A stretch of DNA of 64,000 nucleotides from assembly GCF_036588685.1 (NCBI RefSeq), contig NC_086381.1:12462001-12526000 (forward strand), written 5' to 3'. The position numbers were made by a program, and so were the translations under genes. Shown one piece after another: positions 9,366 to 46,208 of the stretch (its first letter is position 1; every line of letters begins with the position of its first letter). The notes beneath the pieces are model-generated. The model saw only the letters and a list, made by a program, of their open reading frames with translations, did not search any database and was not told where the DNA came from. This stretch comes from Mytilus trossulus. Lineage: Eukaryota.

Positions 9366-10098
9366 ATTTTTCCGACGCCGGTAATCGAATGTGAAAAAGG
9401 TTGAAATTATAACCTAAAAAGATTGAAATAACAAATTAAATTTTTCAATCATAGCGAAACCATAAAAGGGATATATTGAGCTTACGTCAAGCTCTAAATA
9501 GTTATTTCAGAGGCTATACATTGAATTTGTAAATAAATTAAACAGTCTATCAAAGATCTTCAGCTTACATCAACTTTCTTATTTGACAAAATGACACCAT
9601 CAAAAAAATTTGCTAACTGGTTCAACTTATGTTCTGCCATCATGCAAAAACAAACATTACACTGTTTTCACTCTCGCAAACAGACACACGTAAATATTGC
9701 ACTGTTTATCTCATTTGTAAATATGCATCAACACAATATTTAGCTAGAATTTGACTTCAAACTGTTATTGTAATTATTGTCAAAAATGTGTTTAATTATT
9801 CTTTCTATCAATGATCATCATAGATGTATAAACCATATTGTAATCGATTTTGATACAGACATAATACTGTTTTGGTAGAAGTTTGCTATTTTGTAACATT
9901 TAACCATTAACATGCAAGACATCTAAGTGAGTGTGTATGTATTGCGAGCACCGTATAAATAGATATAAAGTTACATTTCTAGCGTATGTAGCTTATTTAA
10001 TTGTGAAAAATGTCGAAGCATATGTGCTTTTTTCGTATGAAATTGTTGAAAACAAACAAATTGAAATAAACATATTTATTACCTACGGAAATGTTTCT

Positions 10099-10235
10099 AC
10101 TTACTTTTTTCGTGTGGTTACATCTTAGTTACATCTCAATGTTTATACACATGCTGCAAAATGAAAATAATTACGTTTTATAACCAGTTGCGAAGCCAAT
10201 AGCATGACAATTTTATAAATAGAATACACTTCCGA
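10099..10235 (-). promoter_or_regulatory. Probable core promoter and 5'UTR exon of SLC26 copy 1
   Basis: On the minus strand: CGGAAGTG (ETS-like), TATAAAA near 10211-10217, then GTAAGT donor at 10104-10099. The block is conserved at 2289-2430, partly at 15334-15430 and partly at ~32765-32802. Confidence 0.55.
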
Positions 10236-25756: not shown

Positions 25757-27841
25757 TTACTTTCTATGAGTTGCTGCAAAATAAGCATCTAAAATGTCAG
25801 AATACACATTTTGTATATCTACTGTCTCTGATAAATCCGATTTCTCCGTGAACGTTTTCATGAAATTAGTACAGTTTCCAAACATTACAGTAACCCCAAC
25901 ATATTTGTATTCGGAGTTGATCTGTATTAAAGCCTTCATACCATTCATGTCGATATAGTTCATAGACGAACAGTCGATAATAATATGCGTGAGGGGTACG
26001 ACGGGTATTTCGTTTTCATTGTTTGTTTTTGACAGCGACATTCTTTCATCGTTGTTACCGTTATTTTCGCTTTGATTTATGTTTATTTCAACATTATTTT
26101 CTAAATGTTTGTCTTGTTGTTTTGGAAAGGCTTTTGGATTAAATGTTGCTTTGTACAATTCTTTTACAAATTGATCAGCAGTAGCAAAATAAAGAGATGA
26201 TTCCATTCTAAATATTGCAATTTTTGAATTACATAATGGAATATCATGAGTCTTTTGCTCCAGAAGACGATCCTCTTGCTCAACTTTTCTAATGGTGTAC
26301 GAAGATGAATTCTGACTTTGCACGACAACTGTTAAAAGACAAAGTAGCACTCCAACATACAGGGCGTAAGGGAAATCAATTAGAACACCACACAATACTG
26401 TTCCAACAAAGATAACAAAATCATAACGATTTACTCGCCACAGTTTTGGTAGTTCCTTGAACTGGTATAATAGATTTTTAACAGCTACGATGATCATTAC
26501 TGCAAGTACAGCTTTAGGAGCTGATTCTAAATATTTTCCTATGAACATTATTACAAGCAAGACAAAAATAGCTGATACTATTCCATTCAATGTTGTCTTT
26601 GCACCCATTGTACTTAAGATAACTGTACGTGGTGGTGCAACGCAAGCTGGAAAGCAGGAGAAAAAAGAGCCACCTAAATTTGCAATACCATATGCGACGA
26701 GTTCTTGATTGTCGTCAACTGAATATCCGTGTTTCACCTCACAGAGTCGGGCCATTGAAATCGTAAGCACAAACACAATGAAACCGACAACAACACTATG
26801 TCCTAGTATATCTACCGACACTCGAGGTAGCTCCGGCGTTGGTAGACCAGGAGGTATTTCTCCTACAACACCAATATCGAAGGTGTCGTGTAACTTTGCA
26901 AAATGTGAAATAACTGTTGCTGTTACAACTAAAATTATATCGATTGGTATTGGCATTTTCATTTTGTTTTTGAATCTCTCATTAATGACATCTTTTATCA
27001 ATACAAGTATTATTAAGCATATAACGGAGACTATCAATGTAGCAACATGAATCTTCGGAAATGCTTTGAATATTTCAATATATACATATATCAGTTTTCC
27101 TGGTTTGTTAACAGGTGGAATTTTTATGCCAAGAGCATTAGGGATTTGGCTGGAAATGATATGAATAGCACCGGTTGTGGTAAAAGCCGCAATGAAAGAA
27201 GATGACAGATAAGAAGTAATGAACCCCATTCGGCACAACCCCATGATGAACAGCAGTAATCCAACGATAAAAGACGAACCTGCTGCTACAGACACTTTGT
27301 ACTTTAACACGTCATTATCCATTTCCGGTGAAACTGTTGTTAGGTTACCAACCGTGGAACCGTTAACAGCAGAGTGATGACCAGGCAAATCATACTGTTC
27401 TAACCGTGACTCTACAAGCTCTGCTGTAAAAATTGCAATCACAGCATTTGTTCCGAAAGAAACGTGTTGCGATGTTCCGAAAATCACATACAGGAGAACA
27501 GGAAAAAAGGACGTATACAATCCATAGGCCGGTGATAATGATGCTAATATACCAAATGCAAGTCCTTGTGGAAAATGAAGACAAGCTACAGATAAGCCAC
27601 TTATCAAATCATCTAAGATGTATTTCCTGATCTTATACGTTCTTATTACGTTTATTATTGGGAAAAGTGTTAGTAAATATGCACATAACTTGGAAAGGGT
27701 ACATTTTTTCATGATATTTTCTGAAAATGACTTCGATGGGCTCTTTGGTTTGCCATAAAACTCGTACAATTCAGACTGTGTTTTACGAGATCTTGAAAGC
27801 TGTAAAATATCAGACGACATATCTCCGTTGTTGATACTCAT
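25757..27841 (-). CDS. SLC26/SulP anion transporter, copy 2 (close paralog of copy 1), single coding exon, 694 aa
   Basis: Same motifs, colinear and highly similar to 7314-9365. Homologous acceptor (ttgttatttctatattttAG) at 27878-27877. 3' flank 25390-25560 resembles 7000-7150. Confidence 0.96.
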   Translation of the reverse strand: MSINNGDMSSDILQLSRSRKTQSELYEFYGKPKSPSKSFSENIMKKCTLSKLCAYLLTLFPIINVIRTYKIRKYILDDLISGLSVACLHFPQGLAFGILASLSPAYGLYTSFFPVLLYVIFGTSQHVSFGTNAVIAIFTAELVESRLEQYDLPGHHSAVNGSTVGNLTTVSPEMDNDVLKYKVSVAAGSSFIVGLLLFIMGLCRMGFITSYLSSSFIAAFTTTGAIHIISSQIPNALGIKIPPVNKPGKLIYVYIEIFKAFPKIHVATLIVSVICLIILVLIKDVINERFKNKMKMPIPIDIILVVTATVISHFAKLHDTFDIGVVGEIPPGLPTPELPRVSVDILGHSVVVGFIVFVLTISMARLCEVKHGYSVDDNQELVAYGIANLGGSFFSCFPACVAPPRTVILSTMGAKTTLNGIVSAIFVLLVIMFIGKYLESAPKAVLAVMIIVAVKNLLYQFKELPKLWRVNRYDFVIFVGTVLCGVLIDFPYALYVGVLLCLLTVVVQSQNSSSYTIRKVEQEDRLLEQKTHDIPLCNSKIAIFRMESSLYFATADQFVKELYKATFNPKAFPKQQDKHLENNVEININQSENNGNNDERMSLSKTNNENEIPVVPLTHIIIDCSSMNYIDMNGMKALIQINSEYKYVGVTVMFGNCTNFMKTFTEKSDLSETVDIQNVYSDILDAYFAATHRK

Positions 27842-29783
27842 GATAATTAGAACAGTAAACCAGGATAAATCATTACCTAAAATATAGAAATAACAAATTA
27901 TTCTTCACTGAATATATAGCTTCACCATATAAGGTAATCGAATTTCATGATGTTCTATTCGTATAACACAATCGAAATGTATTCAGGGCATAACTCTTAT
28001 CATACCTATATGCACATCTTCAATTTATCATCTTACCATGAATAATTAAAATTTAATCAGCATTTGATAAACCATGTAAGAAAAGATGCGGCAAAAAAGA
28101 ACATACTGAATACTAGTAGTAGTATGTTCTAAGGTAAAGAGAATAACTCTCATATTTGTTAACAACGCAGTATATCCTTCTTCTTCATGTATGGATCTTA
28201 CAATTTTCAAAGTTCTATATACATTGACGAATAATGTAAACATGTAGAAATAAAACAAACACTAGCTGTCAAACTCTTTTTTTTACCGATTTCATATTTG
28301 ATTATTAACATTCTTAAACGTATATCCAAATGATAAAAAAGTTTTAAATAATCAATAAACAATGTATGAGCTCGATCATATGTATCAACATTTCATGTGA
28401 ATTTAAGTGTAGAGGCCATTAATTAACTCTCGAGGTCAACCCCGAAGACTGCCGACGGTAATATAACCCGGTATATACATATTGTATTTTTCTAGGTATG
28501 TTTGATTTCATATTATACGTTGAAAATATATGTTATTCATCGTTTTTATCTGTAAAATTATGAATTTTTGTGGATCGAATCGAATCAGTCAATCAAATGG
28601 TTTATCCTTGTTTCGCTTTTAATGTCGAGGTCGAATTATTCACCTGCAATTGATTAATTCATCAGTCATGCTTCTTATCTTATTTTGACAAAATTGAACT
28701 AAAAAGGCTGCTAAAAGCGAATTCCTATTTCACTATTTCACTTTCATTATTGATTGATATATTAATTGTCTTATATACGATACCAGAAAGAAATGTTGTT
28801 GATTTTAAGCGCAATGCGTATGGAGAATTATTATGCGAATATCTTATAAATTCGAACTGTTGTATTTTAAATGGAAGAAAAGGTGTCAAAAATAATGATA
28901 CTTATATATCTCAGCTAGGATCTTCTGTAGTGGATTATTGTCTTATTCCATACGAATTACTTGATATATTTGAGCAATGTGACGTCATAACTATGTCGTA
29001 ATTAATCGAAAAACATGATATATTTGAGTATGTTGATCCATCAGTGTCAAAACCTGATCACTCGATGCTTTTGTGGAATGTAAATATAAAGAAATGTGTG
29101 TCGGAAGCATCTAATGATAATGGAAATAATAGTGAATATAATAAGTTTAATGTGAAAAATATTCCAAATTCGTTCTTAACGGATCATTTACGTGATATTG
29201 AAGAGTTAATTTTATCCTTGGAATTGAATAATGTCAACCAAAATAACTTGGATATAGTTTACCAAAATTTTGTTAATCTTTTGAAAAACGAAATGTCGGA
29301 AAAGATGGATTACAAAGTTATAAAAGTGTCATTAAGCTCGAATAATAAAAAACGTCGGATGAAAAACCGTGGTGGTCGGATCATCTCACAAATTTATGGA
29401 ATGATGTATGCGCTATGGAAAAGGAGATGCTGAAAAGTAAATCAGATACTAGGAAACGTCAATGTAGACAAGAATTCATATGTAATCGGAAATTGTTCGA
29501 CCGTGAAACACAACGTTTGAAACGGCGTAACTGGAGAGACCAATTACTAGTTAATAAAATTGACAATTTGGAATCAACAAATCAAACTGAATTTTGGAAA
29601 AAGATCGGACGGGTCGGAGTAGGCGAAGAGAAAAGGAAAGCTATACCTATGTCTGTGCAACTACCGGATGGTAGTATTTCACATGATCGAGACGCTGTAC
29701 TGAATGAATGGAAACGATCTTTCTGTAGTTTGTTGAACCCAGAAGGTAGTATTGATAATAAAATTAACGGTACCAATTTTCTT

Positions 29784-29827
29784 GCACCAGATGCGCATTT
29801 CGACAATACATGTCTCTTCAGTGATGC
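29784..29827 (-). ncRNA. Minimal type I hammerhead ribozyme (intact)
   Basis: GCAUCA CUGAAGA GACA-UGUAU-UGUC GAAA U-GCGC-A UC^ UGGUGC: 6-bp stem I, CUGANGA and GAAA cores, 4-bp stem II, minimal palindromic stem III, AUC cleavage triplet. Confidence 0.92.
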
Positions 29828-30133
29828 TCGTGGCCAAAATATTTGAAATCCAAAGCTTATATAAAAGATGAAGAGCTATAATCCAAAATGTCCAAAAAGT
29901 ATAGCCAAATCCGTGAAAGGAATCAGAGCTTTGCATGAGGGAGATACATTCCTCAATTTATAATAATTTCTAATATTTTTTAACAGCAAATTTTAATAAC
30001 ACAAAAAATCCGTATTTTCATGCCAGTACCGAAGTACTGGCTACTGGGCTGGTGATACCCTCGGGGACTAAAAGTCCACCAGCAGAGGCATCGACACAGT
30101 GGTAGTAATAAAATTAACGGTACCAATTTTCTT

Positions 30134-30175
30134 GCACCAGATGCGCATTTCGACAATACATGTCTCTTCAGTGAT
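30134..30175 (-). ncRNA. Minimal type I hammerhead ribozyme, second copy (stem I shortened by the insertion boundary)
   Basis: Core identical to 29784-29827; stem I is AUCA/UGGU plus a U-G pair. Confidence 0.85.
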
Positions 30176-33100
30176 AACCTTCCAACGGACACAAGTACAG
30201 ATAATGGTGCTACGATGAATTATGACATTACTCATGAGGAAGTTAAACGAGCAGTGATCAGTTTGAAAGTTAACAAAGCTGTTGGTGTAGATGAAATCCC
30301 ATCGGAAGTCCCCAAGAATCCGTGTTTGTTGAACTTCCTACTAAGTTTGTTAAATTAATGTTTCTTCAGTGGTACAATTCCAACTTTCTGGCGGAAAGGA
30401 ATTATTAATCCAATACCTAAGTCGTCGACGTCGAATCCAAAAGACCCAATGTGTTACCGCGGTTTAACACTTGTTCCTGTTTGCTACAAGCTGTACTGTC
30501 ATATATTGAATAACCGATTGCTCGAATGGGAGGAGGAAAATAATATTTTAGATGATTGTCAAAATGGTTTCCGAAAGGGACGGAGTACAATTGATCATAT
30601 AAAGTCATTATCGTCAATTATTGAAACAAGAAAGCTAAAACGTTTGTCGACTTTCACAGCTTTTATAGACTTCCGAAATGCGTATGATGGGATAGACCGT
30701 AATTTGTTATGTCAGAAATTGCTTGATATTGGAATATGCAGGAATATGTATAATGCTATCGTGTCGTTATGTAAGTCAGTAGAATGCTGTGTTCGGATAA
30801 ATGGACAATTAACGGACTGGTTCAATGTTCAGTGTGGTCTAAAACAAGGTTGTTTGCTTTCACCATTACTTTTTAATGTGTATGTGAACGGTCTTGTTAC
30901 GTATATATGTTCATTAAATGCTGGAATAAACATTGACGAGGAAAATGTGTCGATTCTACTGTACGCTGACGACCTTGTATTGCTAGCTGGCTCGGAATCA
31001 GACTTACAGGTTTTGTTACATGGACTTCAGCTCTGGTGTGCGGAGAATGAGATGACAATAAATCATAACAAGTCAAACGTTGTTCATTTCCGACCAAATT
31101 CGACCCCAAGGACAATAAACAGTTTTAAATGTGGCCACCTTGACATAAATGTGGTGGAGAAATATACATACCTAGGTTTAGTGTAAACAGAGCATTTGGA
31201 CTATCAAATTATGGCAAAACACGTAGCAGCATCAGACAACCGTGCCTTGGGACTAGTGATATCTAAATATAAATATTTTGGAGAACTACCGTTTGATTCT
31301 TTCACAAAATTATATGACTCGATTGTTTGGAGTACAATCAGCTACGGAGCGGCAGTGTGGGGAGATAGAACATTTTCATGTATAAATTCGATACAAAATA
31401 AGGCAATTCGTTTTTATATGGGGGTCGGACGGTATACAACTAAAGTAGCAGTGAATGGAGATTCAGCCTGGAAACCACCTTGTGTAAGGCAGTGGCGAAC
31501 TGTTATAAATCATTGGAATCGTTTAAGGTATATGAACACTGATCGACAAAATAAAAGAATCCATAACTGGGCGGAACATAGTTTTCGGCGGTATAAAGCA
31601 TGTAAAAATTCAAATTATAGACTTTATCAGCAGTTTGAATTGTGTAATATTAGTGACTGGTATAATGACACGAACATTCACAAAATCTCCTGCTCAACGT
31701 AGAGCATATTCGCAATTCAGATGTGGGGTTGCACCCATACGAATCGAAACCGGGCGTTTCGAACATTTACCAATGCATGAACGGACTTGCTTTATGTGTG
31801 AAAGTAAAACTGAAACTGAGGAACATGTACTAATTGAATGTCCGATTTATGACGATTTAAGGAACGAACTTTATGAATATATAAACAGTGTAGATGAGAA
31901 CTTTAACATGTTAACGAACCGTGAGAAACTGTCTTTTGTGTTGGGATGTCAAAACGTTAATGTTATTTACAAATGTGCCAAAACCTGCAACTCTATTTTA
32001 GACAGAAGGAGACGTTTTTTTTTATATCGATAACATTTTTTTAGACTGTAAAGTTATTTAAATTTGTTTTAGAAATTTTAATAGTACATGTACATAGTTT
32101 TATAAAGTCCTTTTGTTGTTTGATGAAATTTTACTTTTTGTCTCTCATAATTCTTTTAAGAATAGCATTAATATATATTTATGTTTTTATGATATATGTA
32201 AATATTGTATTGTGTATATTAGTGGTGAGACGTTAATAAACTATCTATCTATGTCATCTATCTATCTATCTTATATATTTCGTAGCCGCTTTAAAAGTAG
32301 ATGTATGCAATTAGAATTGAATTGTGCATACATAAATATTGCACTGTGTTTACTCGGTATTTACTCGGTATTATATCGTTTATTTTGACTTGCAATTCAA
32401 TGGCAAAAGTAGAGAAAACATGTTTGCATTTATATTTGTTTTTATAAAAAAAAAATGATAGATGCAAAAACAGTTTTCGACGACGTGAACACTGGTGTGT
32501 TATCGAATTATACACCATCAACACTTACCCACCGAAATATTTTATAACACGATAGTCACATGGACTGTAAACCAAGTTAACATAAAGACCCAATGCCCAA
32601 AAAATTTGTTGATAAAGTTTGACACGTACACGATCATAAAGAAGTCAAAGAACTTACTATGTTTTAAGTTGTTGGCTCCATTTTCGGCACCTTTGAGTAA
32701 ACTTCTTCCTTAAACAAATATATAGTTTGTTTTTATTATCCAGAGCTTCCGAACCCATATCTGGTTTACAATTTAATCTTGAGATAAAGAATACACTTCC
32801 GGCAGTATAAAGATCAATATTTTAAATATAGCAACAAATGAATAGTGATGAAAGAGAGATTATATGTAATTCTAGCATGTATAGATTAAAATTGAATTAA
32901 ATGCGTGAATTAAATCAATTTTTTATGAGTGTATCTTAGGTTCTTAAAATTTAAAGCTCCGCAAACGTTACGTAAATTCTGTCAAATACTATATATTAAA
33001 AAGTTTCTTTCAAAAAAACTTTAAAGTTGTAGAAAAGTGACCTTTACGTCCTCATTGTAGCGATATTCCACAAGGTTAAGAATAGAATACTAAAAATAAA

Positions 33101-33700
33101 TACATATTCCCTAGAATTTGATGTATGAACTTTGATAAAAAAAAAATAATTAGTATTGATGAAAATTTTAGTTTAAGTAAATTTGAGTGAATTTGATTGA
33201 TAACTAATGTATTTAACAATACCAGTAGAACCTTTAAACACTTAATGTTATAAAACAGATTTAAATATTTGATTTGTTATCGTGTTATTTGCTGTTTTTT
33301 TTCAAAGGTCAAAGGTAACGGGATTACGCTTGACTTTAAGCCAAAACACGTGGTCTTGGTCAAATAAGTCAATAGTAAAACCTGTGGATAAAGATACTTT
33401 TCTGTGGTAAAAAGCCTTTATTCAAACTACGCTTTTTGGTAAATCATATTCGGGTGGTCACGAGTTATGCTGTTTACTTTATTAAACAAAAGAAATGAGC
33501 TGTATGCGTCCATTTCATTTTCAAACAGAGTTTCCTGAATTGGCTGAAACTATGATGTTGAATTGAATATAACAATAGTTTGTGTATATGTATAAGTTAA
33601 ATGCAAAGTAAAGTGTACTGTAGAGTATGTATGTCCTCCTTCCTTGTTTACGCCACTTGTTTATTGGGTAAAGGATACGACCTGGTATTAAGATCGTAAT

Positions 33701-33767
33701 CATAGGCACTTGTCTCAGACCCCACCCCCCCCCCTATATACTTTTTTTCCTGAGACATGTGCCTGTG
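33701..33767. mobile_element. 67-bp deletion derivative of the same hAT-like MITE
   Basis: cataggcacttgtctcag...ctgagacatgtgcctgtg; degenerate 8-bp TSD atcgtaat/attgtaaa. Confidence 0.75.
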
Positions 33768-34199
33768 ATTGTAAATCCCATTCTTGTATAGTCACAAACA
33801 TTGAGGCTTTCATCTTAATTTTTATCATTGATTCTTTATTCGTGTGTGTCGCAATAGAATATTTACTAGATATTTTTGTTTCAAAGTTTCTACATTGCAA
33901 TAATTGTTGAAACTCTATAAGAATCAATATGTATATATACATCACCCATCTTAAATGTTCAAAAGTCAATTTAAATTCGAAAATTCCAAATCAAGATCAT
34001 ATTAAAACTAAATATATTCTTCTTACCTTGAAGTTATACAACATTTGACAAAAGTTTGACATAAAATGCATTTATATACCGTCTCAGAAGTTGCAAATGG
34101 GATACTTTAACATTCATTTATGTAATAAAAGCAAACATCCAGTTATACGGTACGGGTTCATTAATCTGGGGGTTTAAACCATACGGTTAATATTAAGAT

Positions 34200-34600
34200 A
34201 TCATGTTGCGAGTTAAGAAAGTCGAGCTGCGGGTAATAAAAGTCGAGTTGCGAGTTAGAAAAGACGCGAGTTGTGAGATATACAAATAGAGTTTTGAGTA
34301 AAGTAAGTCGAGTTGCGAGTAACAAATATCAATTTGAGAGTTAAAAAAGTCTAGTTAGTTTAAACAATATTTATTCAGATAAATCAACATTAAACATATT
34401 ATACAATGAAATAATATTAGGGATTCAGAAACAAGCAATTTGCTTTTACAAATCTGTCTCCCTTTACAGACATAATACACTTATTGAACAATACATAAAT
34501 ATAAATACTGGCATGCTCTGTAATAAATATATGAATATGAAAAGAATGTCGAGTTGCTACTGCAGAATTGCGAGTTAAGCATGTCTAGTTACGAGTTAAG
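34200..34600. repeat. ~20-bp minisatellite (aagtcgagttgcgagtta) split by an antisense LINE-3'-end-like fragment
   Basis: Units at 34200-34355 and 34545-34600; the insert (gtttaaacaatatttatt...ggattcagaaacaagc) resembles 17900-18010. Confidence 0.65.
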
Positions 34601-35582
34601 AAAGTTATTTTTATTTCTGAGATCTAATCATTACTTTGAAAAAATGCATTTGATTAATGATGGACACGAAATATATTCTTAATCTTTCAAAGGCAAGTTA
34701 ACCAGGGGTTAGTTTCCTACTTCTGTCTTGTTATAAAAATCTTATTACAGTTACACCATTTTATTTAGATATTTACATATATGTATGTCTAAAAATATAT
34801 ATATTTCACAAACCAACAGAGTAGGATAATTATAATTACCCTAAAACTCAAACTTCGAACATTCATCTCACAGATATAAATTTATTCTGAAAATTCACCT
34901 TTCGACAATGAAAAATAAACATATGCAAGTATATTCAGAAAACGTAGATGTTTTACTTTAAATCACCATAGTGTCGAAATTTTTACAACACAAGATGGAT
35001 TGAATGCGTTTTTCTCAAACCACAATCGTTCCTTGAGGAAGTCCAAACCAGCACATAGTAGTGTGATGTCGGGCGGTACATGGTGTGGTGAAAAGTGGGT
35101 ACCTAATTTGTTTTGTCAACTCCTCATACAGTATTCAACCCAGATACTTGAAGCTTTACATGAAGATTGCACGAATAATGAAGTCATGCACTTCTTGTAC
35201 CAAATCAGGCGTATGACTGTTGTTATTCATTCGTTTGATGTGTTTGAGCTTTTGATATTGCCATTTGTTGAGAGATTTCCCCTCAAGTTAAATTTTCCTC
35301 TGAGTTTAGTATTTTTGTGATTTTTCTGTTGTTGCAACTATGGAGTATGGACTTGTGTGAGAAAACTGTTTGTATAATCAAATCCACAGTTAAGAGTTCT
35401 ATATTTTCAGTGCTTTGTTATTAATCATTCAGCAAAAATTTACATATAGTATTCAAATTGAGCTGAAGTTATATCCCTTTCAGATAAAGTATCCCTATGG
35501 TCTGGTGTCACATTTGTTGGTGTTATAGTTCCCTTATTCAACATATTTGGAACATTAACAGAACAGAAGTTAAATACTTTAG

Positions 35583-35853
35583 TTACAGACAATTGCATTG
35601 AGTTTGTAGATAAAGGTAATACATTTGTATCGTTGGTTAGCTTACTTGCTTGCTAGCTAAACCGTGGAGTCATTATAAGGTCAGGGATACTACCCTCCTT
35701 TCAAAGTTTCCTAGTCCCACAAAAAGATGGATTGGCTATCTGTAGGACTAGTCTACTCTTAAATTAGGGTAGTTTTACCGAACATAATAATGACTTCACG
35801 GTTCAGCTAGTAAGTCTTACCTTTATCCACACATTCAATGCAATCGGCTGTAA
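35583..35853. repeat. ~270-bp foldback (palindromic) element
   Basis: Paired arms ttgcattga/tcaatgcaa, gataaaggtaa/ttacctttatc, ctagctaaaccgtggagtcattat/ataatgacttcacggttcagctag, ctagtcc/ggactag. Confidence 0.8.
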
Positions 35854-37445
35854 AACAGAAATAACAGAAACATTCTTGCATAGCCGAGCTTGAATTCGAT
35901 CAATACCAGCACTTGTTCCATTTATTACAACTGTGTGTTTTAATAGTAGTTTCCTAATCAAAATCAATAAATTTATCTAAATTTCAAACCTTAATAGATT
36001 TAATACACTATGTATCTACATTTGGGATTAGTAAACTGTGAAAAGTTTACTTATCATAGATTTTGGGAATATTTATCTGTATCTCGTTTCTCATACAAAT
36101 ACCAGTGTCACCGCCAAAGCTGTTTTTATCCTTGTCATTTAAAATAATAAGCTCTTTCTGGTTGCAGTACCAATATTGACGCTTACTTTTTTTTGTGAAA
36201 CCATGTCAAAGTCTTTTGATCACATGACTCGTGATAAACCAATTGATGAGTGTGTATAAGTTAAAACAATGATATAGAAAAAGTAAAGACAATTTGAAGA
36301 AATGAACAAATATATTGCAAATTAGGCACTGCCCATTAGATATTGTCATAACAACTAGAATGGTTTATTTTTCTGGATTTGGATTATTTGTGGTAAATAA
36401 ATTAGTTCTTCATAGGTTGCTTTTCGGTGTTTCGTGTTAACTTTTATACATTATGACTTGGATGGAGAGTTGTCTCATTGGCACTTATACCACATCTTAT
36501 CCATATAAACTCTCGTACGGTATATATTTATACTAAGTTTACTGTATATGCATTTGATTTCTCTAGATCTACGCCGAGGAATACATTGGCTGTACCAGAA
36601 TATGAGATAATTCTTATGTCTATTCCTTTGTCCCACTTTTTGAACATAGTGTTATGTATTAATAGAAACTTCCGAAGTTTGTGATCAAATATAAAGGTAT
36701 GCAGTAATGACATTTATTAATCATTTTGCATGCATGACACTTGCTACGTTTATCATGCAAATCATACCTAATGTATAAAATGAAACTAAATTATGTAAGA
36801 TAGAAAAAAGGAAGTTGCTACCTAGTTCACTATAACATAAAATTTATTCATCATTAATTACATAAAATATAATATGGTGAATGCATACATGTACATCTTA
36901 TGCAAGCGCAAATAAAAATGATACAAATAGAATTGATAGGATTATACTTAGGGTGGCATAATTAAAAAAACACCCATTGAGGCTCTGTAAGCAAACTTCT
37001 AAATTGCCCGGGATCTGTACTCAGAATTTTAGAAAAACTTTCTAAACATTCAATGAACGAGACCTCTGCTTGTTGTAAACACATTAAAGGATAACACAAG
37101 ATTTGATTATTTTGATTTTTCTATGTTTTAAACATTTGAAAATTAACCTTTTTCAGCAAACTGGTAAATATTTTTTTGAATGTTCGTTTTGTTCAGGATT
37201 AGTCTTCATATGTTTTAAAGAGCCTATTTGGTTCTGCTTATTTTTGAAGGCTGTATGGTTACTATTGTGTCAATTGTTATGTTTTGAAACACTAGATAAA
37301 GTATGGACGTATGCCAGAATAAAGGGGGATACAAACTCACAATCAATTGTAGAGAGGCCGGAATCAGCAACAGGAAAAGCTAGAATACAATAAGTGTTCG
37401 AATTGTTTAATAAAGAATTAAGTTAAAACATTACAATATTACATA

Positions 37446-37777
37446 TTATCACATATTTTGAACTGATATGTACGTTTTTGCATGGCCAATAATAGCCGGA
37501 AGTCAAGGTTGGTTATCAGCCCTCGGGGCCAATATCGATATCAGCCCTCGAAATCCATATCGAGCCCCCGAGTTTAACTTCTGGTAACCTGTCAAACAAA
37601 AAGTATTTCTCTTGCTTGAAAATATGTGATAAATAGATTATAACATGTCATTTTCCAGATGGTCCGTGGTATCAGCCCACGACCAATATCAAGCCCTCGG
37701 GTTAAAGCCCTCTGGCTTGATATGGGAGTCTAGGGCTGATCCCAGGGCCATATGGAAATTGCCATGTAATAATCTAT
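37446..37777. mobile_element. Two adjacent foldback elements (37446-37632 and 37633-37777) inserted in the left LTR
   Basis: ttatcacatatttt/aaaatatgtgataa and atagattataacatg/catgtaataatctat arms; the block is absent from the right LTR. Confidence 0.75.
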
Positions 37778-38177
37778 AAATATTATACACGTTGGGTTTT
37801 TTTTCCAAAATATTTCTAAATTAAAAACATGAATAAAAATGAAACATACATTTTTAATTGTTCTTAATATAATAAAACCGTTATAATGAATACAGTACAT
37901 ATGATCTAAAAACTTACTTTAAAGAAAAATGAATAAATTTAACTGTAGTAATACATGTAGTTTATTTCAAATTATTTCAAACTTACCTAGAATACAATAA
38001 GTGTTCGAATTGAACACAAATTGTAATCCTAGTCTTTTATAGACTTTATTGTAATTACTGATTATCAAATTATCTTTGATGCCACGCCCACTTCTAATAA
38101 ACTTTCGAACAATGGACGTAACAAACAGATGTTCACGATTATTTTTTAATTTATATATAATCTTATGTGTGTCCAAT

Positions 38178-40345
38178 AATGTTGAATATATTCATAGTAA
38201 TGAAAATATGTATGATGATTATCTTGATAGCTTTATATCATATGAAGAAGTGTATAATGTACTGTTGTCTTCAAAAAATGGTAAATCGCCTGGCTGTGAT
38301 GAAATTACGGTTGAACTTTATAAGAATCAAACTGCATTGTTAGCTTTAACTCGAATTTTTAATATTTGCTTTGACTCTGGTAAGATACCTGCTTTATGGT
38401 CGAAAGGTATCATTAATCCGATTCCAAAGAGCTCTACTGCAGATCCAAGAGACCCTATGGCATACCGTGGAATAACTTTGGCTCCTGTATCTTATAAACT
38501 TTACTGTGGTGTATTAAACTCTCGTCTTACCGTTAAACTTGATGAACTTAATTTTCTTCATGATGAACAAAATGGTTTCAGAAAGGGACGAAATACTATA
38601 GACCATATTTCTACTTTGACTACTGTCATAGAAACACGTAAATTGCGTAAATTATCAACATTTGTAGCATTTATAGACTTTAAAAAAGCTTACGACTGGA
38701 TAAACAGGGATTTGCTTTTTGGTAAATTGGAAAATTTAGGTATAAGTAGTAAAATGTTAAATGCTATTTTTTCACTTTATAGAAATGTATATTCATGTGT
38801 AAAAGTAAATGGTAATTTTACTGACTGGTTTGAGGTTAAATGTGGTTTGAAACAAGGGTGTATTCTGTCTACAATTTTGTTTAACATTTTTATTAATGAC
38901 CTTGTAGATGAAGTTAAAAAAATAGATATTGGAGTAAAAATTGATGATGAAAAAATTTGTGTACTACTTTATGCAGATGATCTTGTATTTATAACAGAAA
39001 ATGAGAAAGATTTACAAAAAATGTTGGATACTTTAAATATATGGTGTTGTAAAAATGATTTAGTTGTAAATCTAGAGAAATCAAAAATTGTACATTTCAG
39101 AACTAAGTCTATACCAAAGACAAATTTTACTTTTGTACTTAATAATAATGATATGGAAATTGTTCCTAGTTATACTTATCTAGGTTTACTGTTGTCAGAA
39201 TTTTTAGACTACAATTGTATGGCTAAGGCAGTAGCTAAATCTGCAAGTAGGTCATTAGGTTTATTAATAGCTAAATGTAAAGCTAATGGAGGTTTTCAAT
39301 TTGATACATTTACAAAACTTTTTGATACACTTGTTATGTCTGTAATTGAATACGGTGCGTCAATTTGGGGTCACCAGGATTTTTCTTGTATTAATGCTGT
39401 AAAAAATAGAGCAATGAGATTTTTTATGGGTGTGGGTAAATACACCCCTAACTTAGCCTTATATGGAGATATGGGTTGGATGCCCAGTATTATATCTCAG
39501 TGGACATGTATTTTTAGATTATGGTCGAGACTTACTAAAATGTCTCATTGTAGAGTTAATAAAAAGGTTTTCTTATGGGGCAATAGATGCTGTAATAGTA
39601 AATTTAAAAATTGGAATTAAAGAGTAAATGTGAAATTTAAAGAAATGGATATGGAGTTTTTATGTAATACTGATTTTTCTATTGATAAAAATACAATTAA
39701 ACAAATTGAAAAGGAAAATTTTTGTAGATATAAAGAGAAGTGGTACTCTGACTTAATGTACAATGAAAGAAGTAAATTGCGAACGTATAGAATGTTTAAG
39801 CAATGTTTTAATAGAGAAAAATATTTATGTATTAATATGCCTGGAAAATATAAGAGTGCATATGCTAAATTTAGATGTGGTGTTGCACCTCTGAGAATAG
39901 AAACTGGCCGATATGAAGGCATTATGGTTGACAATAGATTATGTTTTAATGAGCAATGTAAGAAAAATAACATTATTGAAGATGAGAAACATGTCTTAAT
40001 TAACTGCCCAGTATATGCAGATTTACGAGCTATTTTATTTAGACATGCTAGCTCTTTTAATTGTGATTTTGTTAATTTGTCTGATGATGATAAATTCAAA
40101 TTTTTATTCACTGATGAAAATGTGTGTTACTTTTTAGCCAAAATCTGCTATGATGTATTATTAAAAAGAAAAGGTATTATATATAATTGTAGATAATAAT
40201 GTGTTTTGTAGAAATTTTATAGTCTCTCATAACTCTTTTTAGAGTGGCTCATGTTGTTTTAAATATTACTGTAATTTTATAAATGTATAAATGTATGTCA
40301 ATTTTGAGGTGAGACTCTAATAAAGTATTTGTCTTTGTCTTGTCT
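38178..40345 (+). mobile_element. Young 5'-truncated LINE of a related family (RT plus C-terminal domain, one in-frame stop)
   Basis: ORFs 38076-39620 and 39630-40196 are in the same frame, separated by one TAA. Motifs GKSPGCD, QNGFRKGRNT, FIDFKKAYD, LLYADD, IETGRY...EDEKHVLINCP. AATAAA plus (tcttg)n tail. Sits inside an LTR. Confidence 0.93.
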
Positions 40346-40829
40346 TAGATATAGGAAGATGTGGTGTGAGTGCCAATGAGACAACTCTCCATCCAAATAA
40401 CAATTTAAAAATTAAACCATTATAGGTTAAAGTACGGCCTTCAATCTTGTCTACTTGACCATCAAGTTAACAGAAACTAATGTAGCATCTGCTATTTGTC
40501 CCAGAATACATAATTAAATTTTCATTATGTCATAAATTTGTTTATCTTTAACTTGTACTGACTAATAAATTATATAACAGTCTTTGCGAAATTGAGCAAC
40601 TCAAATTCCATTCTTAATAACAGCACATTGATACCAATAATCTATAATAATATCAGGAATAGTTAAATGGATAGTTTACAACATAGTTTGTTCAAAAGTT
40701 ATGTCAAATCTACTTTTATAATTTAAAGCATCAACTTTCTATATACTTTATATTGAACAATAACAATATAAAACACAATTTTACATTACAATAATCGCCC
40801 TCCCTTTAAAAAGATGACTATTCCACCAA

Positions 40830-41663
40830 TCATATAAATCAGATTTTGTTGTTGCCGAAACAGTGTCATATCAAATTCTTGCATGATCTTCCAAATGGAA
40901 AAGGAAAGATTCTTCACTCTTTTGTTTCGATAAATCATTACAAGAACAGTATTGTCTAAAAGTATTCAACCACGTTTCAGGGTTTTGTGAATTGTCACCC
41001 TTAAATTTTTCAATTTTTAAAATAGAAGACATATTAAATATTTTCATAGGAGGTATTCTTGTCCTACCTGCTGAAATAGCTGCTGTTGCGGTTGATGTTG
41101 TTGTTCTTGGTGGTGCAGATGTCGTTGAAACTGCTATAGTAGATGCGGTTGTTGATGCTGTCATAACTTCTATTAATGCCGTTGCAGTGTTGGATGAAAA
41201 ATGAGACGGTATCTGTAAAGACAGGCAATGAGAGTTTATTAACCGCCAATGGAGTTCCAAGATAAGGTGGTTGCACTGGTCCAGGTGTTCGTGTCCCTGC
41301 GGAAATCGTCAGTAAGGCTTGCGGAATTTTAGGTCGAACCAAACTTGTTGGTTGTAAAGTCCTTATTGTGGTTGATACGATGGACGGTATAAACGGGTTG
41401 TAAACAAGAACAGGTCCAGTTGGTTGGTCACAACTATATTGAGGAGGTAGTGTCCACGGATCTTGGACAAAAGGTATTGTTGTGTCTTCACGTTCAGGTA
41501 ATTTATGTTCGAACTGATGTTTAACTACCAATTCCTCCTCTTCGGGCAAAATGTCCAGTTGGTAAAACGTAGTGTCTAACTTATGATGTTCTGCCTCTTT
41601 GTTGTAATTAAGAGGTGTTTTACCAGGCTTTGTAGGTTTTTCTGTTGCTTTAAACATCCTCAA
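40830..41663 (-). pseudogene. Frameshifted, truncated retrotransposon gag
   Basis: Pro/Thr-rich N-terminus, then IEKFKGDNSQNPETWLNTFRQYC...FHLEDHARI*YD, a retrotransposon Gag capsid-like motif with W replaced by a stop. Confidence 0.75.
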
Positions 41664-43970
41664 ACCATTCTATTGTGTCAATTGTTATCGTGTTTTGAAA
41701 CCCTAGCTAAAGTATTGACGTTTGCCACAATGAAGGGGGAAACAAACTCACAATCAACTGTAGAGAGGTCGGAATCAGCCGAACAGGAAAAGCTAGAATA
41801 CAATAATTGTTCGAATTGTTTAATGAAGAACAAATTTAAAACATTACAATATTAGATAATATTTGACACATTGTTTTTTCCAAAGTAATTGTAAATTGAA
41901 AACATTAATAAAAATGAAACATACATTTTTAAATTGTTGTTTTATGATAAAACAGTAATAAAGAATACAGTACTTTAATATGATCTAAAAACTTTCTTTA
42001 CTGAAAAATAAATAAATTTAACTATTAGAAATTATCTGAAAAATAAATAGTTTATTTCAAATTATTTCAAACTTACCTAGAATACAATAAGTGTTCCAAT
42101 TGAACGCAAATTGTAAACCTAGTCTTTTATAGACTTTATTGTAATTACGGATTATCAAATTATCTTTGAAGCCACGACCACTACTGATAAACTTTCGAAT
42201 CATGGACGTAACAAACAGATGTTTACGATTATTGTTTAATTATACGTCCAATACTTGACCTTCGAATAAACAGAATCTAATGTAGCATCTGCTATTTGTC
42301 CCAGAATACATAATTACATTTTCATTATGATATAAATTGTCATAAATTTGTTTATTTTTAACTTGACCTGACTAATAAAATATTTAACAGTCTTTGTGGA
42401 ATTTAGAAACTCAATTTCCATTCTTAATAACAGCATATTGATACCAATAATCTATAATAATATCAGGAATAGTTAGATGGATACTTTACACCATAGTTTG
42501 TCCAAAAGTCATGTCAACTCTACTTTTATAATTTAAAGCATCAACAATCTATACTTTATATTGAACGATTGCAATGTAAAACACAATTTTACATTACAAT
42601 TTAACCAATAGTCGTTAATTTCTATATCATTTAGTCTCTTGTGGAGAGTTGTCTCGTTGGCAATCATACCATATCTTTCAAAATAGTTTGAAAACAATGT
42701 TAAATGCAACTTACAAAAGAGGAGGCAGTCTTGCAATTGTATGATATTATTAGTGTCATTTAAGCTAGATGATATAAACCGTTTAGCATATTTCCGAACA
42801 ACACAACAAAGCTCTTTTCTGTTTAATTTGCGTGTACGTATATAAAATAGTTTACCCCAAAATAATATATATTAATTAAGTAGGGTTTTTTTTATTAAAA
42901 AAATAGATGAAACAACAAAAAATCCTTATTGCTTACAGACTAACAGAACAACAGAGAGGCGATTTATAATTGATGTGTAGTTGACGTTTTTTTTTAACTC
43001 AGCATGTATATCGTAGAATGATCGTGTACATTTCATTTTAAACCATTTACCCTTTTTTAGTATATAATTGCAGGATATTTATGGTTCTGCGGTACCTGTG
43101 AAAATTGTACATATCAAAATTCTAAACCAGTTATTGTGTGAGAGCGTATTACAGACACCTGCCTAAACTATCATGTATACCGGGCTCAGTGATTTCCAGA
43201 GAATGACACCTGCTTTAACTATCATGTATTTAGAGCTTATTTAGACCAAAACACAATTTCATCACGGTCGTCACCTTTGTCATAGTATACCTTGTATTGA
43301 GTTTCAATATCTATAATAACGTATATGATATAAAGTTTCATTGTTAGACCTAATTAACTTAAGTATCATAAAAGAAATGTCTTGATTGCATAGTATACCT
43401 TTCGAGAATATAGAACTCAATTAGCATTACCAACAAATCCATATTTATTTCGTTGTTCAATTGAATTCAGAAGGTTTCCATTCTGTTTCTATGGAAACCG
43501 TTTTTTTCTCTTTGAAATATCGTATATCTCTTTTCCCTATGTATAATTATCCTGAAAGCTCGTGACATTTTCTCAAACCTACCTGTGATTTAAGGGTTAA
43601 AATTCCGTCATTATTCAATAAAAGACAAGCAAATTACAGCATCAAAGGTAAGGATTTTCATTTTTCCAGGCTAAAATCTTATCTCAAACTATAAACAAAA
43701 CAGTTTTTAAGTTCTTTATTAGTGATGATTTATTCAATTTTTTAATATTCACAAAGTAAAGAAACTACATCATAAATACAAGATTAATAAAGAACGAAGC
43801 TGAACACACTGTAAAATAGAAAGTTTAGATTCTTTTTCGATATTCAGTATTAATCTTTTTGCAATTTTTTACTTTCATCTAAATATAACAATTTAAAAGT
43901 AAAGACAGCTGTTTATTTTTTTCTTATTAATTTGAAAATTGGATCATTTTTTTGTAATCCATTTCTTCAG

Positions 43971-46208
43971 ATGCTGATGGACGAAACTGATCAAATATCT
44001 TTAAAAAGAAGATTTTATTCGACAGAGAAATTGGACGAAACATATCGCAGAGTAAATCCACAGAGGAGGTCTTTTTTGCAAAATTTCAAATCTCAATGTT
44101 ATTGTTCCAATAAACGGGCATGGAATATTCTAACAACCGTCCTTCCGTTTTTGAAATTTACTGCAGAATACAAAGTTAGTAATATAGTATGTGATATCAT
44201 CAGTGGATTAACAGTCACAATGCTGCATATAGCACAAGGTATAAGCTTCGCCATGTTGGCCGGTCTCAAACCGCAATACGGGTTATATACATCAATATTT
44301 CCAGTTGCAATATACTTTATCTTTGGAACATCTCAGCACGTTTCCTTTGGGTCAAACGCAGTGTTGGCTATTTTAACCAGAAATGTAATACAGAGAGAAG
44401 TTGAACTACAGAGAGAAGGTTATTATTTGAACACTACAACTTCTGCCTATGCCAGACAGTTTCCTATAAATGCAAGTGAAGGTTACATGTCCTTTACAAC
44501 AGAGCCCACTATGATTTCATCAGGGGCAATGACTGCAAATACGTCATACCAACCTGTTAATTACACTACCACTACAAAGGTAATACCACCAACAGATGAC
44601 GATGACTATTCTAGGCTAAAAGGAGAAATCGGTGTTATTGCTTGTTTGCTGACTGGTATTTGGTTGACAGGATTTGGAATCTTACGATTGGGATGGATTT
44701 CAAAGTATTTGTCAACTAGTTTTATTGGCGGTTTCACAACTGCATTGGCCATTCATATTGCATCATTAGAAATTCCAACCATGCTTGGTATACAAGTTTT
44801 ACCTCGTTTTGGTGCAGGAAGATTAGTATATCTGTATGTTGACCTATTTACAGAAATTAAGATGACCATTCTTGGTGACTTCACAATTGCCTTGGTTACT
44901 CTGGTTACCATCTTGACATATAGAATTATAACAAGTAAATACAAAATACATCTAAAATTCCCTATACCTTTAGAACTGCTTATTGTGGCAATCGGTATTG
45001 TTGCTTGTTATTTTGGGAAACTGGAGAGCAATTACGACATTACGGTACTTGGCGAGGTACCAGTCGGATTTCCAATACCTTCAGTGCCTACATTACAACG
45101 AAGTTCTAACATGATTTCTGATTGCTTAATTATGGCGCTTTTAATATTTATCATTTCCGTTTCAACAGTAAGAACTGCAGGGGTAAAAGAAAAACAGTAT
45201 ACGGACTACAACCAAGAACTGATAGCATATGGGCTCTGTCATGTTTTTTCTTCTTTCTTTTCTTGTTTTCCTCAAGCCACTTCACCACCAAGAACAATGA
45301 CTCTCAAACACTTGCGCGCTAAGACAACTTTTCACGCGATAGTAACTATAATCATAATGGTTTTAGTCATTCTATGGATTGGACGTGTTTTTGAATCCGT
45401 ACCTATGGCAATGATAGGAGCCATCGTTGTGGCATCGATGATAGATTTGTTTGCTCAGTTCTCTAAATTACCAAAGTACTGGAAAGTTAACAGGTTTGAT
45501 TTCTTCACGTGGATGATCACTTTTCTGGTATCAATATTTGCTGATTTAGATTATGGATCAGTTACTGGGGTTGTTTTTTCGTTCTTATCTGTTGTCATCC
45601 AACACCAAATTGCAAAAGGGCGCACAATTGGGTTTTCCGATAAAGAAAGTGTAACTTTTGATGAAAAGAGAAGAATTCACGTAAAAGAATTTCCATCGGT
45701 TAAAGTATTTATGTTTGATGCACCAATTATTTTTGCAAATGCTGAAATATTCAAAGACAAACTCTATCGACATGTTCCTAAACCTAAAATTAAGACGGAA
45801 GCTGCTCGTTTGCCATCTAGTGATTCTGTTGGGAACAGAACCAATGAAAGCGACTACTGTGATAACTTAAACGTAAATGGTCACGTGCATGTAAAGAATG
45901 ACAAAATTTGTTCAGTGGCCAAGTTGAAACACGTGGTTATCGATTGTCAAAAGGTGAATTATGTTGATATTTCTGGAGTAGATGTTCTTACTGAAGTAAT
46001 AAAAGAATACAAGGAAGTTGAAATCAATGTTTATTTTGTTAACTGCTCGACGAGAGTCAGAGATGTACTACAAGCTGCAGGTTTCTTCAAAACATTCCCG
46101 AAAGATCACATTTTCTACGATGTATTTGATGCCATATTTGCAATTGACAATTCTTTTCTAGGTACCCCGCTTAAAATTTCAATGGTCGAAGAGATAACAA
46201 AGCTATGA
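43971..46208 (+). CDS. SLC26/SulP anion transporter, copy 3 (divergent paralog), single coding exon, 745 aa
   Basis: Motifs DIISG, HIAQG, YGLYTSIFP, FGTSQH, NQELIAYG and STAS (IDCQKVNYVDISG). ATG at 43971 directly follows the acceptor tttcttcAG; candidate upstream UTR-exon donor GTAAGG at 43648. Ends in ITKL, a class I PDZ-binding motif. Confidence 0.95.
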   Translation: MLMDETDQISLKRRFYSTEKLDETYRRVNPQRRSFLQNFKSQCYCSNKRAWNILTTVLPFLKFTAEYKVSNIVCDIISGLTVTMLHIAQGISFAMLAGLKPQYGLYTSIFPVAIYFIFGTSQHVSFGSNAVLAILTRNVIQREVELQREGYYLNTTTSAYARQFPINASEGYMSFTTEPTMISSGAMTANTSYQPVNYTTTTKVIPPTDDDDYSRLKGEIGVIACLLTGIWLTGFGILRLGWISKYLSTSFIGGFTTALAIHIASLEIPTMLGIQVLPRFGAGRLVYLYVDLFTEIKMTILGDFTIALVTLVTILTYRIITSKYKIHLKFPIPLELLIVAIGIVACYFGKLESNYDITVLGEVPVGFPIPSVPTLQRSSNMISDCLIMALLIFIISVSTVRTAGVKEKQYTDYNQELIAYGLCHVFSSFFSCFPQATSPPRTMTLKHLRAKTTFHAIVTIIIMVLVILWIGRVFESVPMAMIGAIVVASMIDLFAQFSKLPKYWKVNRFDFFTWMITFLVSIFADLDYGSVTGVVFSFLSVVIQHQIAKGRTIGFSDKESVTFDEKRRIHVKEFPSVKVFMFDAPIIFANAEIFKDKLYRHVPKPKIKTEAARLPSSDSVGNRTNESDYCDNLNVNGHVHVKNDKICSVAKLKHVVIDCQKVNYVDISGVDVLTEVIKEYKEVEINVYFVNCSTRVRDVLQAAGFFKTFPKDHIFYDVFDAIFAIDNSFLGTPLKISMVEEITKL

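What the first reader, a model, noticed from the sequence alone, without database searches (positions are those of the whole stretch)
27877..32805. The retrozyme and LINE lie inside the probable 5'UTR intron of SLC26 copy 2, with the ribozymes in the gene's sense strand
Seen: copy 2 has the same pre-ATG acceptor as copy 1, and sequence resembling copy 1's intron and promoter resumes beyond the LINE (taaatattgcactgt at ~32332 versus ~9691; agaatacacttccg at 32788 versus 10221). Minus-strand GTAAGT donors occur at 32528 and 32657. Inference: the copy 2 pre-mRNA crosses the LINE antisense and both hammerheads in sense. The host promoter could therefore drive circRNA production, and intron self-cleavage could compete with splicing and lower copy 2 output relative to copy 1. 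Copy 1, which lacks the insertion, is a natural control.
Basis: partly seen in the sequence, partly recalled or inferred. Interest (0 to 1): 0.85.

Follow-up and report, generated by a model that had tools for sequence, protein, structure and literature searches.

The report
Retrozyme and LINE in SLC26 leader intron
A mussel sulfate-transporter gene copy most likely carries, inside the intron of its untranslated leader, a dead LINE and a small self-cleaving "retrozyme" repeat pointing the same way as the gene; this is an ordinary transposon insertion of a known kind, and no RNA data could be obtained to show any effect on the gene.

Summary
SLC26 copy 2 (CDS 25757-27841, minus strand) has the same pre-ATG acceptor as copy 1. 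It also shares it with a third paralog, copy 0, just left of the window.

A four-way paralog alignment places a conserved CGGAAGTG promoter motif and a GTAAGT donor at 32652-32657. The inferred 5'UTR intron is 27877-32657 (4781 nt), against 691 nt in copy 1.

The intron holds three elements:
- an abundant repeat at 28250-28758;
- a 5'-truncated, broken LINE at 28775-32275 on the plus strand, antisense to the gene;
- a 420-nt solo copy (1.2 units) of a 350-nt non-LTR retrozyme at 29756-30175, nested in the LINE with a TGATAA duplication and in gene sense.

The retrozyme has two type-I hammerhead cores, cutting at 30140 and 29790. The upstream one has a shortened helix I. The family has at least 761 candidate copies in this genome, probably Mytilus trossulus, and fits the published Mytilus retrozymes.

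The transcription start site, splicing, cleavage and any cost to the gene remain inference. Published kinetics predict only a small effect on splicing.

The scan holds 30 notes in this genome that match "retrozyme hammerhead intron"; the eight shown describe intronic copies on other DNA. Verdict: ordinary, a new member of a known kind.

The parts
25757..27841 (-). SLC26 copy 2 coding sequence, a single ORF of 694 aa
   Evidence: ORF list. Pfam Sulfate_transp and STAS domains in homologs, and a 694-aa M. californianus ortholog at 90% identity. dN/dS against its paralogs is 0.19-0.22.
27842..27876 (-). 35-nt untranslated start of the ATG exon
   Evidence: Lies between the AG acceptor and the ATG. 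The equivalent piece is 48 nt in copy 1 and 47 nt in copy 0. The lengths do not differ by multiples of 3 and the sequence is poorly conserved.
27877..32657 (-). Inferred 5'UTR intron of copy 2 (4781 nt), with acceptor AG at 27878/27877 and donor GTAAGT at 32657-32652
   Evidence: The acceptor is conserved in copies 0, 1 and 2. The donor aligns with GTAAGT in copy 0 (2300-2305), copy 1 (10099-10104) and an orphan unit (15334-15339). No RNA evidence.
28250..28758 (.). Very abundant interspersed repeat, family not determined
   Evidence: At least 3417 candidate matches in the own genome to query positions 349-857 of 27901-28774.
28775..32275 (+). 5'-truncated, degenerate LINE, antisense to the gene, with a (CTAT)n tail
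   Evidence: RVT_1 at E=1.2e-32 (30449-31186) and a weak zf-RVT hit. It is broken into at least 5 ORFs. Six related copies exist in the genome, of which five are 83-95% identical to the 306-nt probe and one is 69%. Homology to three of them ends at 32261, followed by a CTAT repeat at 32241-32271. There is a 172-nt deletion at 31685.
29756..30175 (-). Solo non-LTR retrozyme insertion of 1.2 units of a 350-nt repeat, nested in the LINE
   Evidence: A perfect 70-nt direct repeat lies 350 nt apart. Other LINE copies lack the insertion and join 29758 to 30172 with a 6-nt TGATAA overlap (29753-29758 and 30172-30177). The unit has at least 761 candidate copies at 95-98% identity, both solo and in tandem arrays.
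30135..30176 (-). Upstream (5') hammerhead core, cutting after 30140; helix I is shortened to 5 bp and partly formed by flanking LINE sequence
   Evidence: Descriptor scan gives helix I 5 bp, helix II 4 bp, helix III 3 bp. The insertion starts at unit phase 281.
29784..29827 (-). Downstream (3') complete type-I hammerhead, cutting after 29790
   Evidence: Descriptor scan gives helix I 6 bp, helix II 4 bp, helix III 3 bp. The core is nearly invariant in the 40 other family copies aligned with it.
32658..32802 (-). Diverged promoter and putative non-coding exon 1 block of copy 2. It holds CCGGAAGTG at 32794-32802 and an A/T-rich box near 32728-32740. The start site is not mapped.
   Evidence: BLAST E=3e-6 to copy 1. 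nhmmer E=0.003. Four-way alignment. The stretch 32290-33000 is unique in the genome.
32523..32528 (-). Second GTAAGT, a possible alternative donor, in a block conserved with copy 0
   Evidence: The homologous site in copy 1 reads GTTAAA, so it is not a conserved donor.
9414..10104 (-). Homologous 691-nt 5'UTR intron of copy 1, without the LINE or retrozyme

Best explanation
The interval is most likely the 5'UTR intron of SLC26 paralog copy 2. Its donor is the GTAAGT at 32657 and its acceptor the AG at 27877.

Three transposon insertions enlarged this intron from roughly 0.8 kb to 4.8 kb:
- an abundant repeat at 28250-28758;
- a 5'-truncated, now broken LINE lying antisense to the gene;
- a 420-nt solo copy of a 350-nt non-LTR retrozyme, which landed later inside the LINE and lies in gene sense.

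Shown: the anatomy, the orientations, the empty-site proof of nesting, the family membership of the repeat, and the paralog conservation of acceptor, donor and promoter motif.

Inferred:
- Transcription starts at the ancestral promoter, so the pre-mRNA crosses both hammerheads.
- If it does, cleavage at 30140 and 29790 would release a 350-nt RNA with 5'-OH and 2',3'-cyclic phosphate ends, which a tRNA ligase (RtcB) could circularise.
- This could happen on the nascent transcript or on the excised intron.
- The reported Mytilus ribozyme is slow and exon 2 lies only about 1.9-2.3 kb downstream, so the expected cost to splicing is small.
For: - The acceptor is conserved in copies 0, 1 and 2.
- The leader lengths are 35, 48 and 47 nt and are poorly conserved, while homolog N-termini begin at this ATG, so any upstream exon is non-coding.
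- Copy 0 and copy 1 upstream regions are homologous over 1.2 kb (E=8e-65).
- The two best profile hits upstream of copy 2 lie beyond the LINE, collinear and on the correct strand.
- GTAAGT aligns in four paralogous units, and CGGAAGTGTATTC is kept in copies 1 and 2 with one mismatch in copy 0.
- dS between copies is 0.41-0.57, which explains why the rest of the non-coding homology is weak.
- LINE copies without the retrozyme define the insertion and its TGATAA duplication.
- The hammerhead descriptor finds 3 hits in the window against 0.06 in shuffles, and the core is conserved across copies.
- The unit occurs in tandem arrays with 350-nt spacing.
- Published work on Mytilus describes 350-390-bp retrozymes, circRNA and RtcB ligation (PMC7229834).
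Against:
- The copy 2 to copy 1 upstream homology is weak (E=3e-6 and 0.003; nhmmer 0.003 and 0.2), and copy 0 against copy 2 gives no direct hit.
- The TATA-like box of copy 2 is interrupted, and its exon-1 sequence is the most diverged of the four.
- Rfam does not call the hammerheads even at E<=10.
- MFE folding does not recover the ribozyme fold.
- The upstream hammerhead has a truncated helix I.
Confidence: 0.65

Rival explanations
1. The ancestral promoter was cut off or weakened by the insertions. Copy 2 now starts transcription downstream of the retrozyme, in 27880-29750, for example in the abundant repeat or the LINE 5' end. It still uses the conserved acceptor or an unspliced leader. 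In that case the retrozyme is simply upstream flanking DNA that the gene does not transcribe.
For: No RNA evidence places exon 1. The TATA-like box of copy 2 is interrupted by 6 nt and its exon-1 block is the most diverged. Repeats lie right next to the acceptor region.
Against: The CCGGAAGTG motif and the GTAAGT donor are retained at the homologous place. The insertions are young: the LINE is 83-97% identical to its five close relatives and the retrozyme 98% to its closest. A replacement promoter would therefore have had to arise recently.
Confidence: 0.2
2. The retrozyme copy is transcribed as a retrozyme on its own, or by read-through unrelated to SLC26. Alternatively it is silent. In either case its position in the intron has no consequence for the gene or for the circRNA pool.
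For: There are hundreds to thousands of near-identical copies, including long arrays, which can supply the abundant circRNA (PMC7229834). In Xenopus 43.9% of retrozyme copies overlap introns. The scan holds 30 notes in this genome matching "retrozyme hammerhead intron". The ribozyme is slow, and slow intronic ribozymes do not affect splicing.
Against: If the intron model holds, Pol II must pass through the element in sense. Both hammerhead cores are intact.
Confidence: 0.6
3. There is no intron. The conserved AG block is just a conserved leader or promoter-proximal element, and transcription starts a short way upstream in all paralogs.
For: The frame is open from the AG to the ATG in copies 1 and 2. 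No RNA data are available.
Against: The block has the form of a splice acceptor, with a TTAAT branch-like site, a pyrimidine-rich run and then AG|GT. A perfect GTAAGT is conserved next to a TATA/ETS-type promoter block in four units 0.7-4.8 kb upstream. In copy 2, conservation with copy 1 ends about 25-55 nt past the AG.
Confidence: 0.08

Closest known systems
Non-LTR retrozymes of the mussel Mytilus galloprovincialis (Cervera and de la Pena 2020, PMC7229834)
   Same: Same genus (inferred). Tandem or solo repeats of about 350 nt with low GC (37%). One type-I hammerhead per unit, with a short helix III capped by a palindromic GCGC. Two hammerhead-carrying families in one genome.
   Different: No direct sequence comparison with the published clones was possible, because their sequences are not held as text. 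This is a 1.2-unit solo copy nested in a LINE inside a gene, not an array.
Intronic hammerhead ribozymes of amniotes (de la Pena and Garcia-Robles 2010, PMC2933863; cited from the reference list of PMC7229834)
   Same: A hammerhead in the sense strand of an intron of a protein-coding gene.
   Different: Those are single, ultraconserved motifs under selection in specific genes. This is a young, probably neutral copy of a mobile repeat, with two cores.
CPEB3 intronic HDV-like ribozyme (PMC10919898) and the Fong et al. 2009 intron-ribozyme experiments
   Same: The proposed mechanism is the same: self-scission of an intron competes with co-transcriptional splicing and lowers mRNA output.
   Different: CPEB3 has a half-life of 2-3 min and about 10 kb to the next exon. 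Here the related published ribozyme runs at about 0.1 per min and exon 2 is about 2 kb away. The predicted effect is therefore small, and nothing has been measured.
Intronic distribution of vertebrate non-LTR retrozymes (bioRxiv 10.64898/2026.07.22.740005)
   Same: Retrozyme copies are often found in introns (43.9% in X. tropicalis).
   Different: That study reports relative depletion from introns and gives no orientation or splicing data in the section read. Molluscs were not analysed.

Membership tests
Hammerhead ribozyme, type I | Catalytic core CUGANGA ... GAAA ... UH, with the cleavage site after H | tested here: met
   Both copies read CUGAAGA / GAAA / UC. The core is almost invariant across the 40 other family copies aligned with it.
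Hammerhead ribozyme, type I | Three helices around the core, with helix I open | tested here: met
   Helix I is 6 bp (3' copy) or 5 bp (5' copy), helix II 4 bp, and helix III 2-3 bp with a GCGC cap. Shuffled windows give 0.06 such hits.
Hammerhead ribozyme, type I | Match to the Rfam hammerhead covariance models | tested here: not met
   No hit at the gathering threshold in the window, nor at E<=10 in 29600-30300. This is probably because of the minimal helix III. It weakens a formal call but does not touch the core.
Hammerhead ribozyme, type I | Self-cleavage activity | not testable with these tools
   Only the published M. galloprovincialis figure of about 0.1 per min is available. MFE folding does not recover the ribozyme fold.
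Metazoan non-LTR retrozyme | Short (170-400 nt) repeats in tandem, one type-I hammerhead per unit, low GC, no LTR/PBS/PPT and no ORF | tested here: met
   Arrays with 350-nt spacing and solo copies. GC is 37%. There is one hammerhead per unit.
Metazoan non-LTR retrozyme | Expressed as a highly self-paired circular RNA | tested here: inconclusive
   The circular fold is -79.8 kcal/mol with 61% of bases paired and z=-1.5; the linear fold gives z=-1.9. Expression could not be tested.
5'UTR intron of SLC26 copy 2 | Conserved 3' splice acceptor just upstream of the ATG | tested here: met
   Three paralogs share ...tgttatttc.at.ttttAG|GT.
5'UTR intron of SLC26 copy 2 | Conserved 5' splice donor next to a promoter block upstream | tested here: met
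   GTAAGT aligns in four units. A CGGAAGTG motif and A/T boxes lie upstream. The copy 2 match is statistically modest.
5'UTR intron of SLC26 copy 2 | Spliced transcripts joining exon 1 to the ATG exon | not testable with these tools
LINE (non-LTR retrotransposon) | Reverse transcriptase domain, 5' truncation, 3' simple-repeat tail, dispersed related copies | tested here: met
   RVT_1 at E=1.2e-32. Six other copies exist. There is a common 3' end at 32261 with a CTAT tail. Pfam called no endonuclease domain in the short 5' remnant.

The most novel reading that the evidence does not exclude
A solo retrozyme gained two hammerhead cores through its terminal redundancy. It then uses a host gene's Pol II transcription and its spliced-out 5'UTR intron to make a copy-specific 350-nt circular RNA. 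At the same time it measurably lowers the output of this paralog relative to its insertion-free neighbours. That would make it a natural within-genome test of ribozyme-versus-spliceosome competition.
Probability: 0.12. Interest if true: 0.55.

Novelty: new member of a known kind. Interest (0 to 1): 0.3.

Why it matters
If the intron model and cleavage were confirmed, this tandem array would offer a clean natural comparison: three SLC26 paralogs share one leader-intron design, and only one carries a sense double-hammerhead. It could show whether host Pol II introns feed the retrozyme circRNA pool, and whether a slow intronic ribozyme costs the host any mRNA.

As it stands, this is one of many intronic copies of a known repeat family, with no evidence of any effect.

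Tried and rejected
1. My first reading was that the 70-nt repeat, and so the hammerhead, was part of the LINE ORF. This was rejected: LINE copies elsewhere join 29758 directly to 30172, and retrozyme copies elsewhere have no LINE flanks.
2. Rfam gave no hammerhead hit, either at gathering scores on the whole window or at E<=10 on 29600-30300.
3. MFE folding of the two hammerhead regions did not recover the ribozyme fold, and the z-scores were unremarkable.
5. Global MAFFT alignments of the copy 1 and copy 2 upstream regions were ambiguous. Local BLAST, an nhmmer profile and a four-way local alignment were used instead.
6. Direct BLAST of copy 0 against copy 2 upstream found no homology apart from a shared repeat.
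7. A search for more paralogs sharing the copy 2 upstream block found that 32290-33000 is unique in the genome.
8. The supplement of PMC7229834 holds no searchable retrozyme sequence.

The window contains no N runs, and nothing taken for human sequence was met.
Full report
**What is there**

The window holds part of a tandem array of intronless-CDS SLC26 (sulfate transporter/prestin-like) genes on the minus strand.
- Copy 1 is the ORF 7314-9365 (683 aa) and copy 2 is 25757-27841 (694 aa).
- A whole-genome protein search found a third close paralog, copy 0, whose ATG lies 65 nt left of the window. It also found a divergent SLC26 on the plus strand at about 44559-46142.
- The homolog list names copy 0 as "prestin-like [Mytilus trossulus]", on a contig of the same length as the one carrying the window's own protein. 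The genome is therefore very probably M. trossulus.
- Homolog N-termini start at or near this ATG, so any upstream exon is non-coding.
- dS among the three copies is 0.41-0.57 and dN/dS is 0.19-0.25. All three are under purifying selection, and neutral flanks are expected to be only about 60-65% identical.

**Check of the observation**

- Copy 1 to copy 2 homology (83%) runs from the stop codon through the ATG and ends about 25 nt past a shared AG acceptor. The AG is at 9415/9414 in copy 1 and at 27878/27877 in copy 2.
- Copy 0 has the same acceptor.
- The leader pieces between AG and ATG are 48, 35 and 47 nt. They are poorly conserved and out of phase with one another, which fits UTR.
They lie inside the best collinear local alignments between the two upstream regions (E=3e-6 and 0.003).
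- Both GTAAGT donors are at the stated places.

**Where exon 1 is**

- Copy 0 and copy 1 upstream regions are clearly homologous (1866-3018 to 9684-10881, E=8e-65).
- A profile of that alignment, searched over 27879-42000, gives its two best hits at 32825-32681 (E=0.003) and 32538-32327 (E=0.2). Both are on the minus strand and collinear.
- In a four-way local alignment, a CGGAAGTGTATTC motif, A/T-rich TATA-like boxes and a perfect GTAAGT align in copy 0 (2300-2305), copy 1 (10099-10104), an orphan unit at 15297-15428 (GTAAGT at 15334-15339) and copy 2 (32652-32657).
- The inferred leader introns are about 2.3 kb (copy 0), 691 nt (copy 1) and 4781 nt (copy 2).
- Copy 2's block is the most diverged, and its first TATA-like box carries a 6-nt insertion.
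- This is comparative evidence only.

**What fills the intron**

*Abundant repeat.* 28250-28758 belongs to a very abundant repeat (at least 3417 candidates).

*LINE.* 28775-32275 is a LINE on the plus strand.
- It has RVT_1 at E=1.2e-32.
- It is broken into several ORFs and 5'-truncated, and it carries a 172-nt internal deletion.
- Its 3' end is shared with other copies at 32261, followed by a CTAT tail.

*Retrozyme nested in the LINE.*
- The other LINE copies lack the segment 29759-30171 and join the flanks with a 6-nt TGATAA overlap. The retrozyme therefore inserted into the LINE.
- The insert spans 29756-30175. That is 1.2 units of a 350-nt repeat, with a perfect 70-nt terminal redundancy.
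- The unit has at least 761 candidate copies at 95-98% identity, both as solo copies and as arrays with exact 350-nt spacing.

**The ribozymes**

- On the minus strand each repeat reads as follows: helix I, CUGAAGA, a 4-bp helix II, GAAA, UGCGCA (a two-pair helix III with a GCGC cap), then UC with cleavage after the C.
- A descriptor scan finds exactly these two motifs plus one unrelated hammerhead at 3375-3344. Shuffled windows give 0.06 hits.
- The core is almost invariant across the 40 other family copies aligned with it. Variation falls in loop 2 and in the distal part of helix I.
- Rfam does not call them, and MFE folding does not show the fold.
- The architecture, unit size, GC content (37%) and genus match the published Mytilus retrozymes. 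Those have 350-390-bp repeats, about 5000 hammerheads in two families, a rate of about 0.1 per min, circRNA at up to 1% of RNA, and RtcB circularisation.
- The insertion starts at unit phase 281. The upstream hammerhead therefore keeps only 4 native nucleotides of the helix I 5' strand and forms a 5-bp helix, with two G-U pairs, using flanking sequence.

**How solo copies look**

- In the nine insertions examined, the 3' end in retrozyme sense falls within about 10 nt of the ...AAUUUUAUUA unit boundary. The 5' end varies.
- Lengths are therefore n x 350 plus roughly 6-80 nt.
- That fits reverse transcription starting at one place on a circular template and running slightly more than n turns.
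- Among the six single-unit insertions (the window's plus five others), only the window's and one other carry two hammerhead cores.

**Mechanism and its likely weight**

- If transcription starts at the ancestral promoter, Pol II crosses the LINE antisense and both hammerheads in sense.
- Double cleavage would give a 350-nt RNA with the ends that RtcB joins.
- Exon 2 lies 1.9-2.3 kb beyond the cut sites, which is a minute or two of transcription. The related published ribozyme has a half-life of about 7 min.
- Fast, but not slow, intronic ribozymes abolish splicing (Fong 2009, as cited in PMC10919898). The CPEB3 ribozyme, which does lower output, cleaves in 2-3 min with 10 kb still to be transcribed.
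- I therefore expect little loss of copy 2 mRNA. Cleavage of the excised intron is the more likely route to any unit-length RNA.
- Given hundreds of near-identical copies and long arrays, this copy's share of the circRNA pool would be small.

**Limits**

- No start site, junction, cleavage end or expression level was observed.

**Comparison and verdict**

- Intronic hammerheads and intronic retrozymes are known. In X. tropicalis 43.9% of retrozyme copies overlap introns, although they are relatively depleted there.
- This scan holds 30 notes in this same genome matching "retrozyme hammerhead intron". The eight shown describe intronic copies elsewhere, and five of them say sense-oriented (unchecked).
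- The finding is a correctly read, well-delimited example of a known kind. It has a neat paralog control but no evidence of function.

Noticed in passing
window 3344-3375 (minus strand), element about 3300-3650: A third hammerhead with a canonical CUGAUGA core and helices of 6, 4 and 3 bp. It belongs to a second, older retrozyme family of about 350 nt (at least 5731 candidate copies, 84-87% identical). It lies about 1 kb upstream of the copy 0 promoter block. A related fragment lies in the opposite orientation at about 11527-11625 and 12436-12557.
   Followed up: partly
window 15297-15428 (minus strand): An orphan copy of the SLC26 promoter/exon-1 block with a perfect GTAAGT donor (nhmmer E=2.8e-9). 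It lies about 5 kb upstream of copy 1's own exon 1 and has no CDS remnant nearby. It could be an alternative first exon of copy 1 or a relic of a lost paralog.
   Followed up: partly
just left of the window (G000:C9:12459896-12461935) and window 1-2305: A third close SLC26 paralog, copy 0, whose leader intron of about 2.3 kb extends into the window. Relative to copy 1 it contains an insertion of about 1.7 kb (window 162-1866).
   Followed up: partly
loci L002-L012 (solo and arrayed retrozyme copies): Insertions end within about 10 nt of the ...AATTTTATTA unit boundary and start at variable phases, so they are n units plus roughly 6-80 nt long. One (L010) starts exactly at the hammerhead cleavage site. 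This suggests reverse transcription from a defined start on circular, and sometimes cleaved linear, RNA.
   Followed up: partly
window 43932-46208 (plus strand): A 758-aa ORF that is a divergent SLC26 family member (32% identity to copy 0), in the opposite orientation to the tandem array.
   Followed up: no
window 28250-28758: A very abundant repeat (at least 3417 candidates) made of sub-blocks of about 130-145 nt. Its family was not determined.
   Followed up: no
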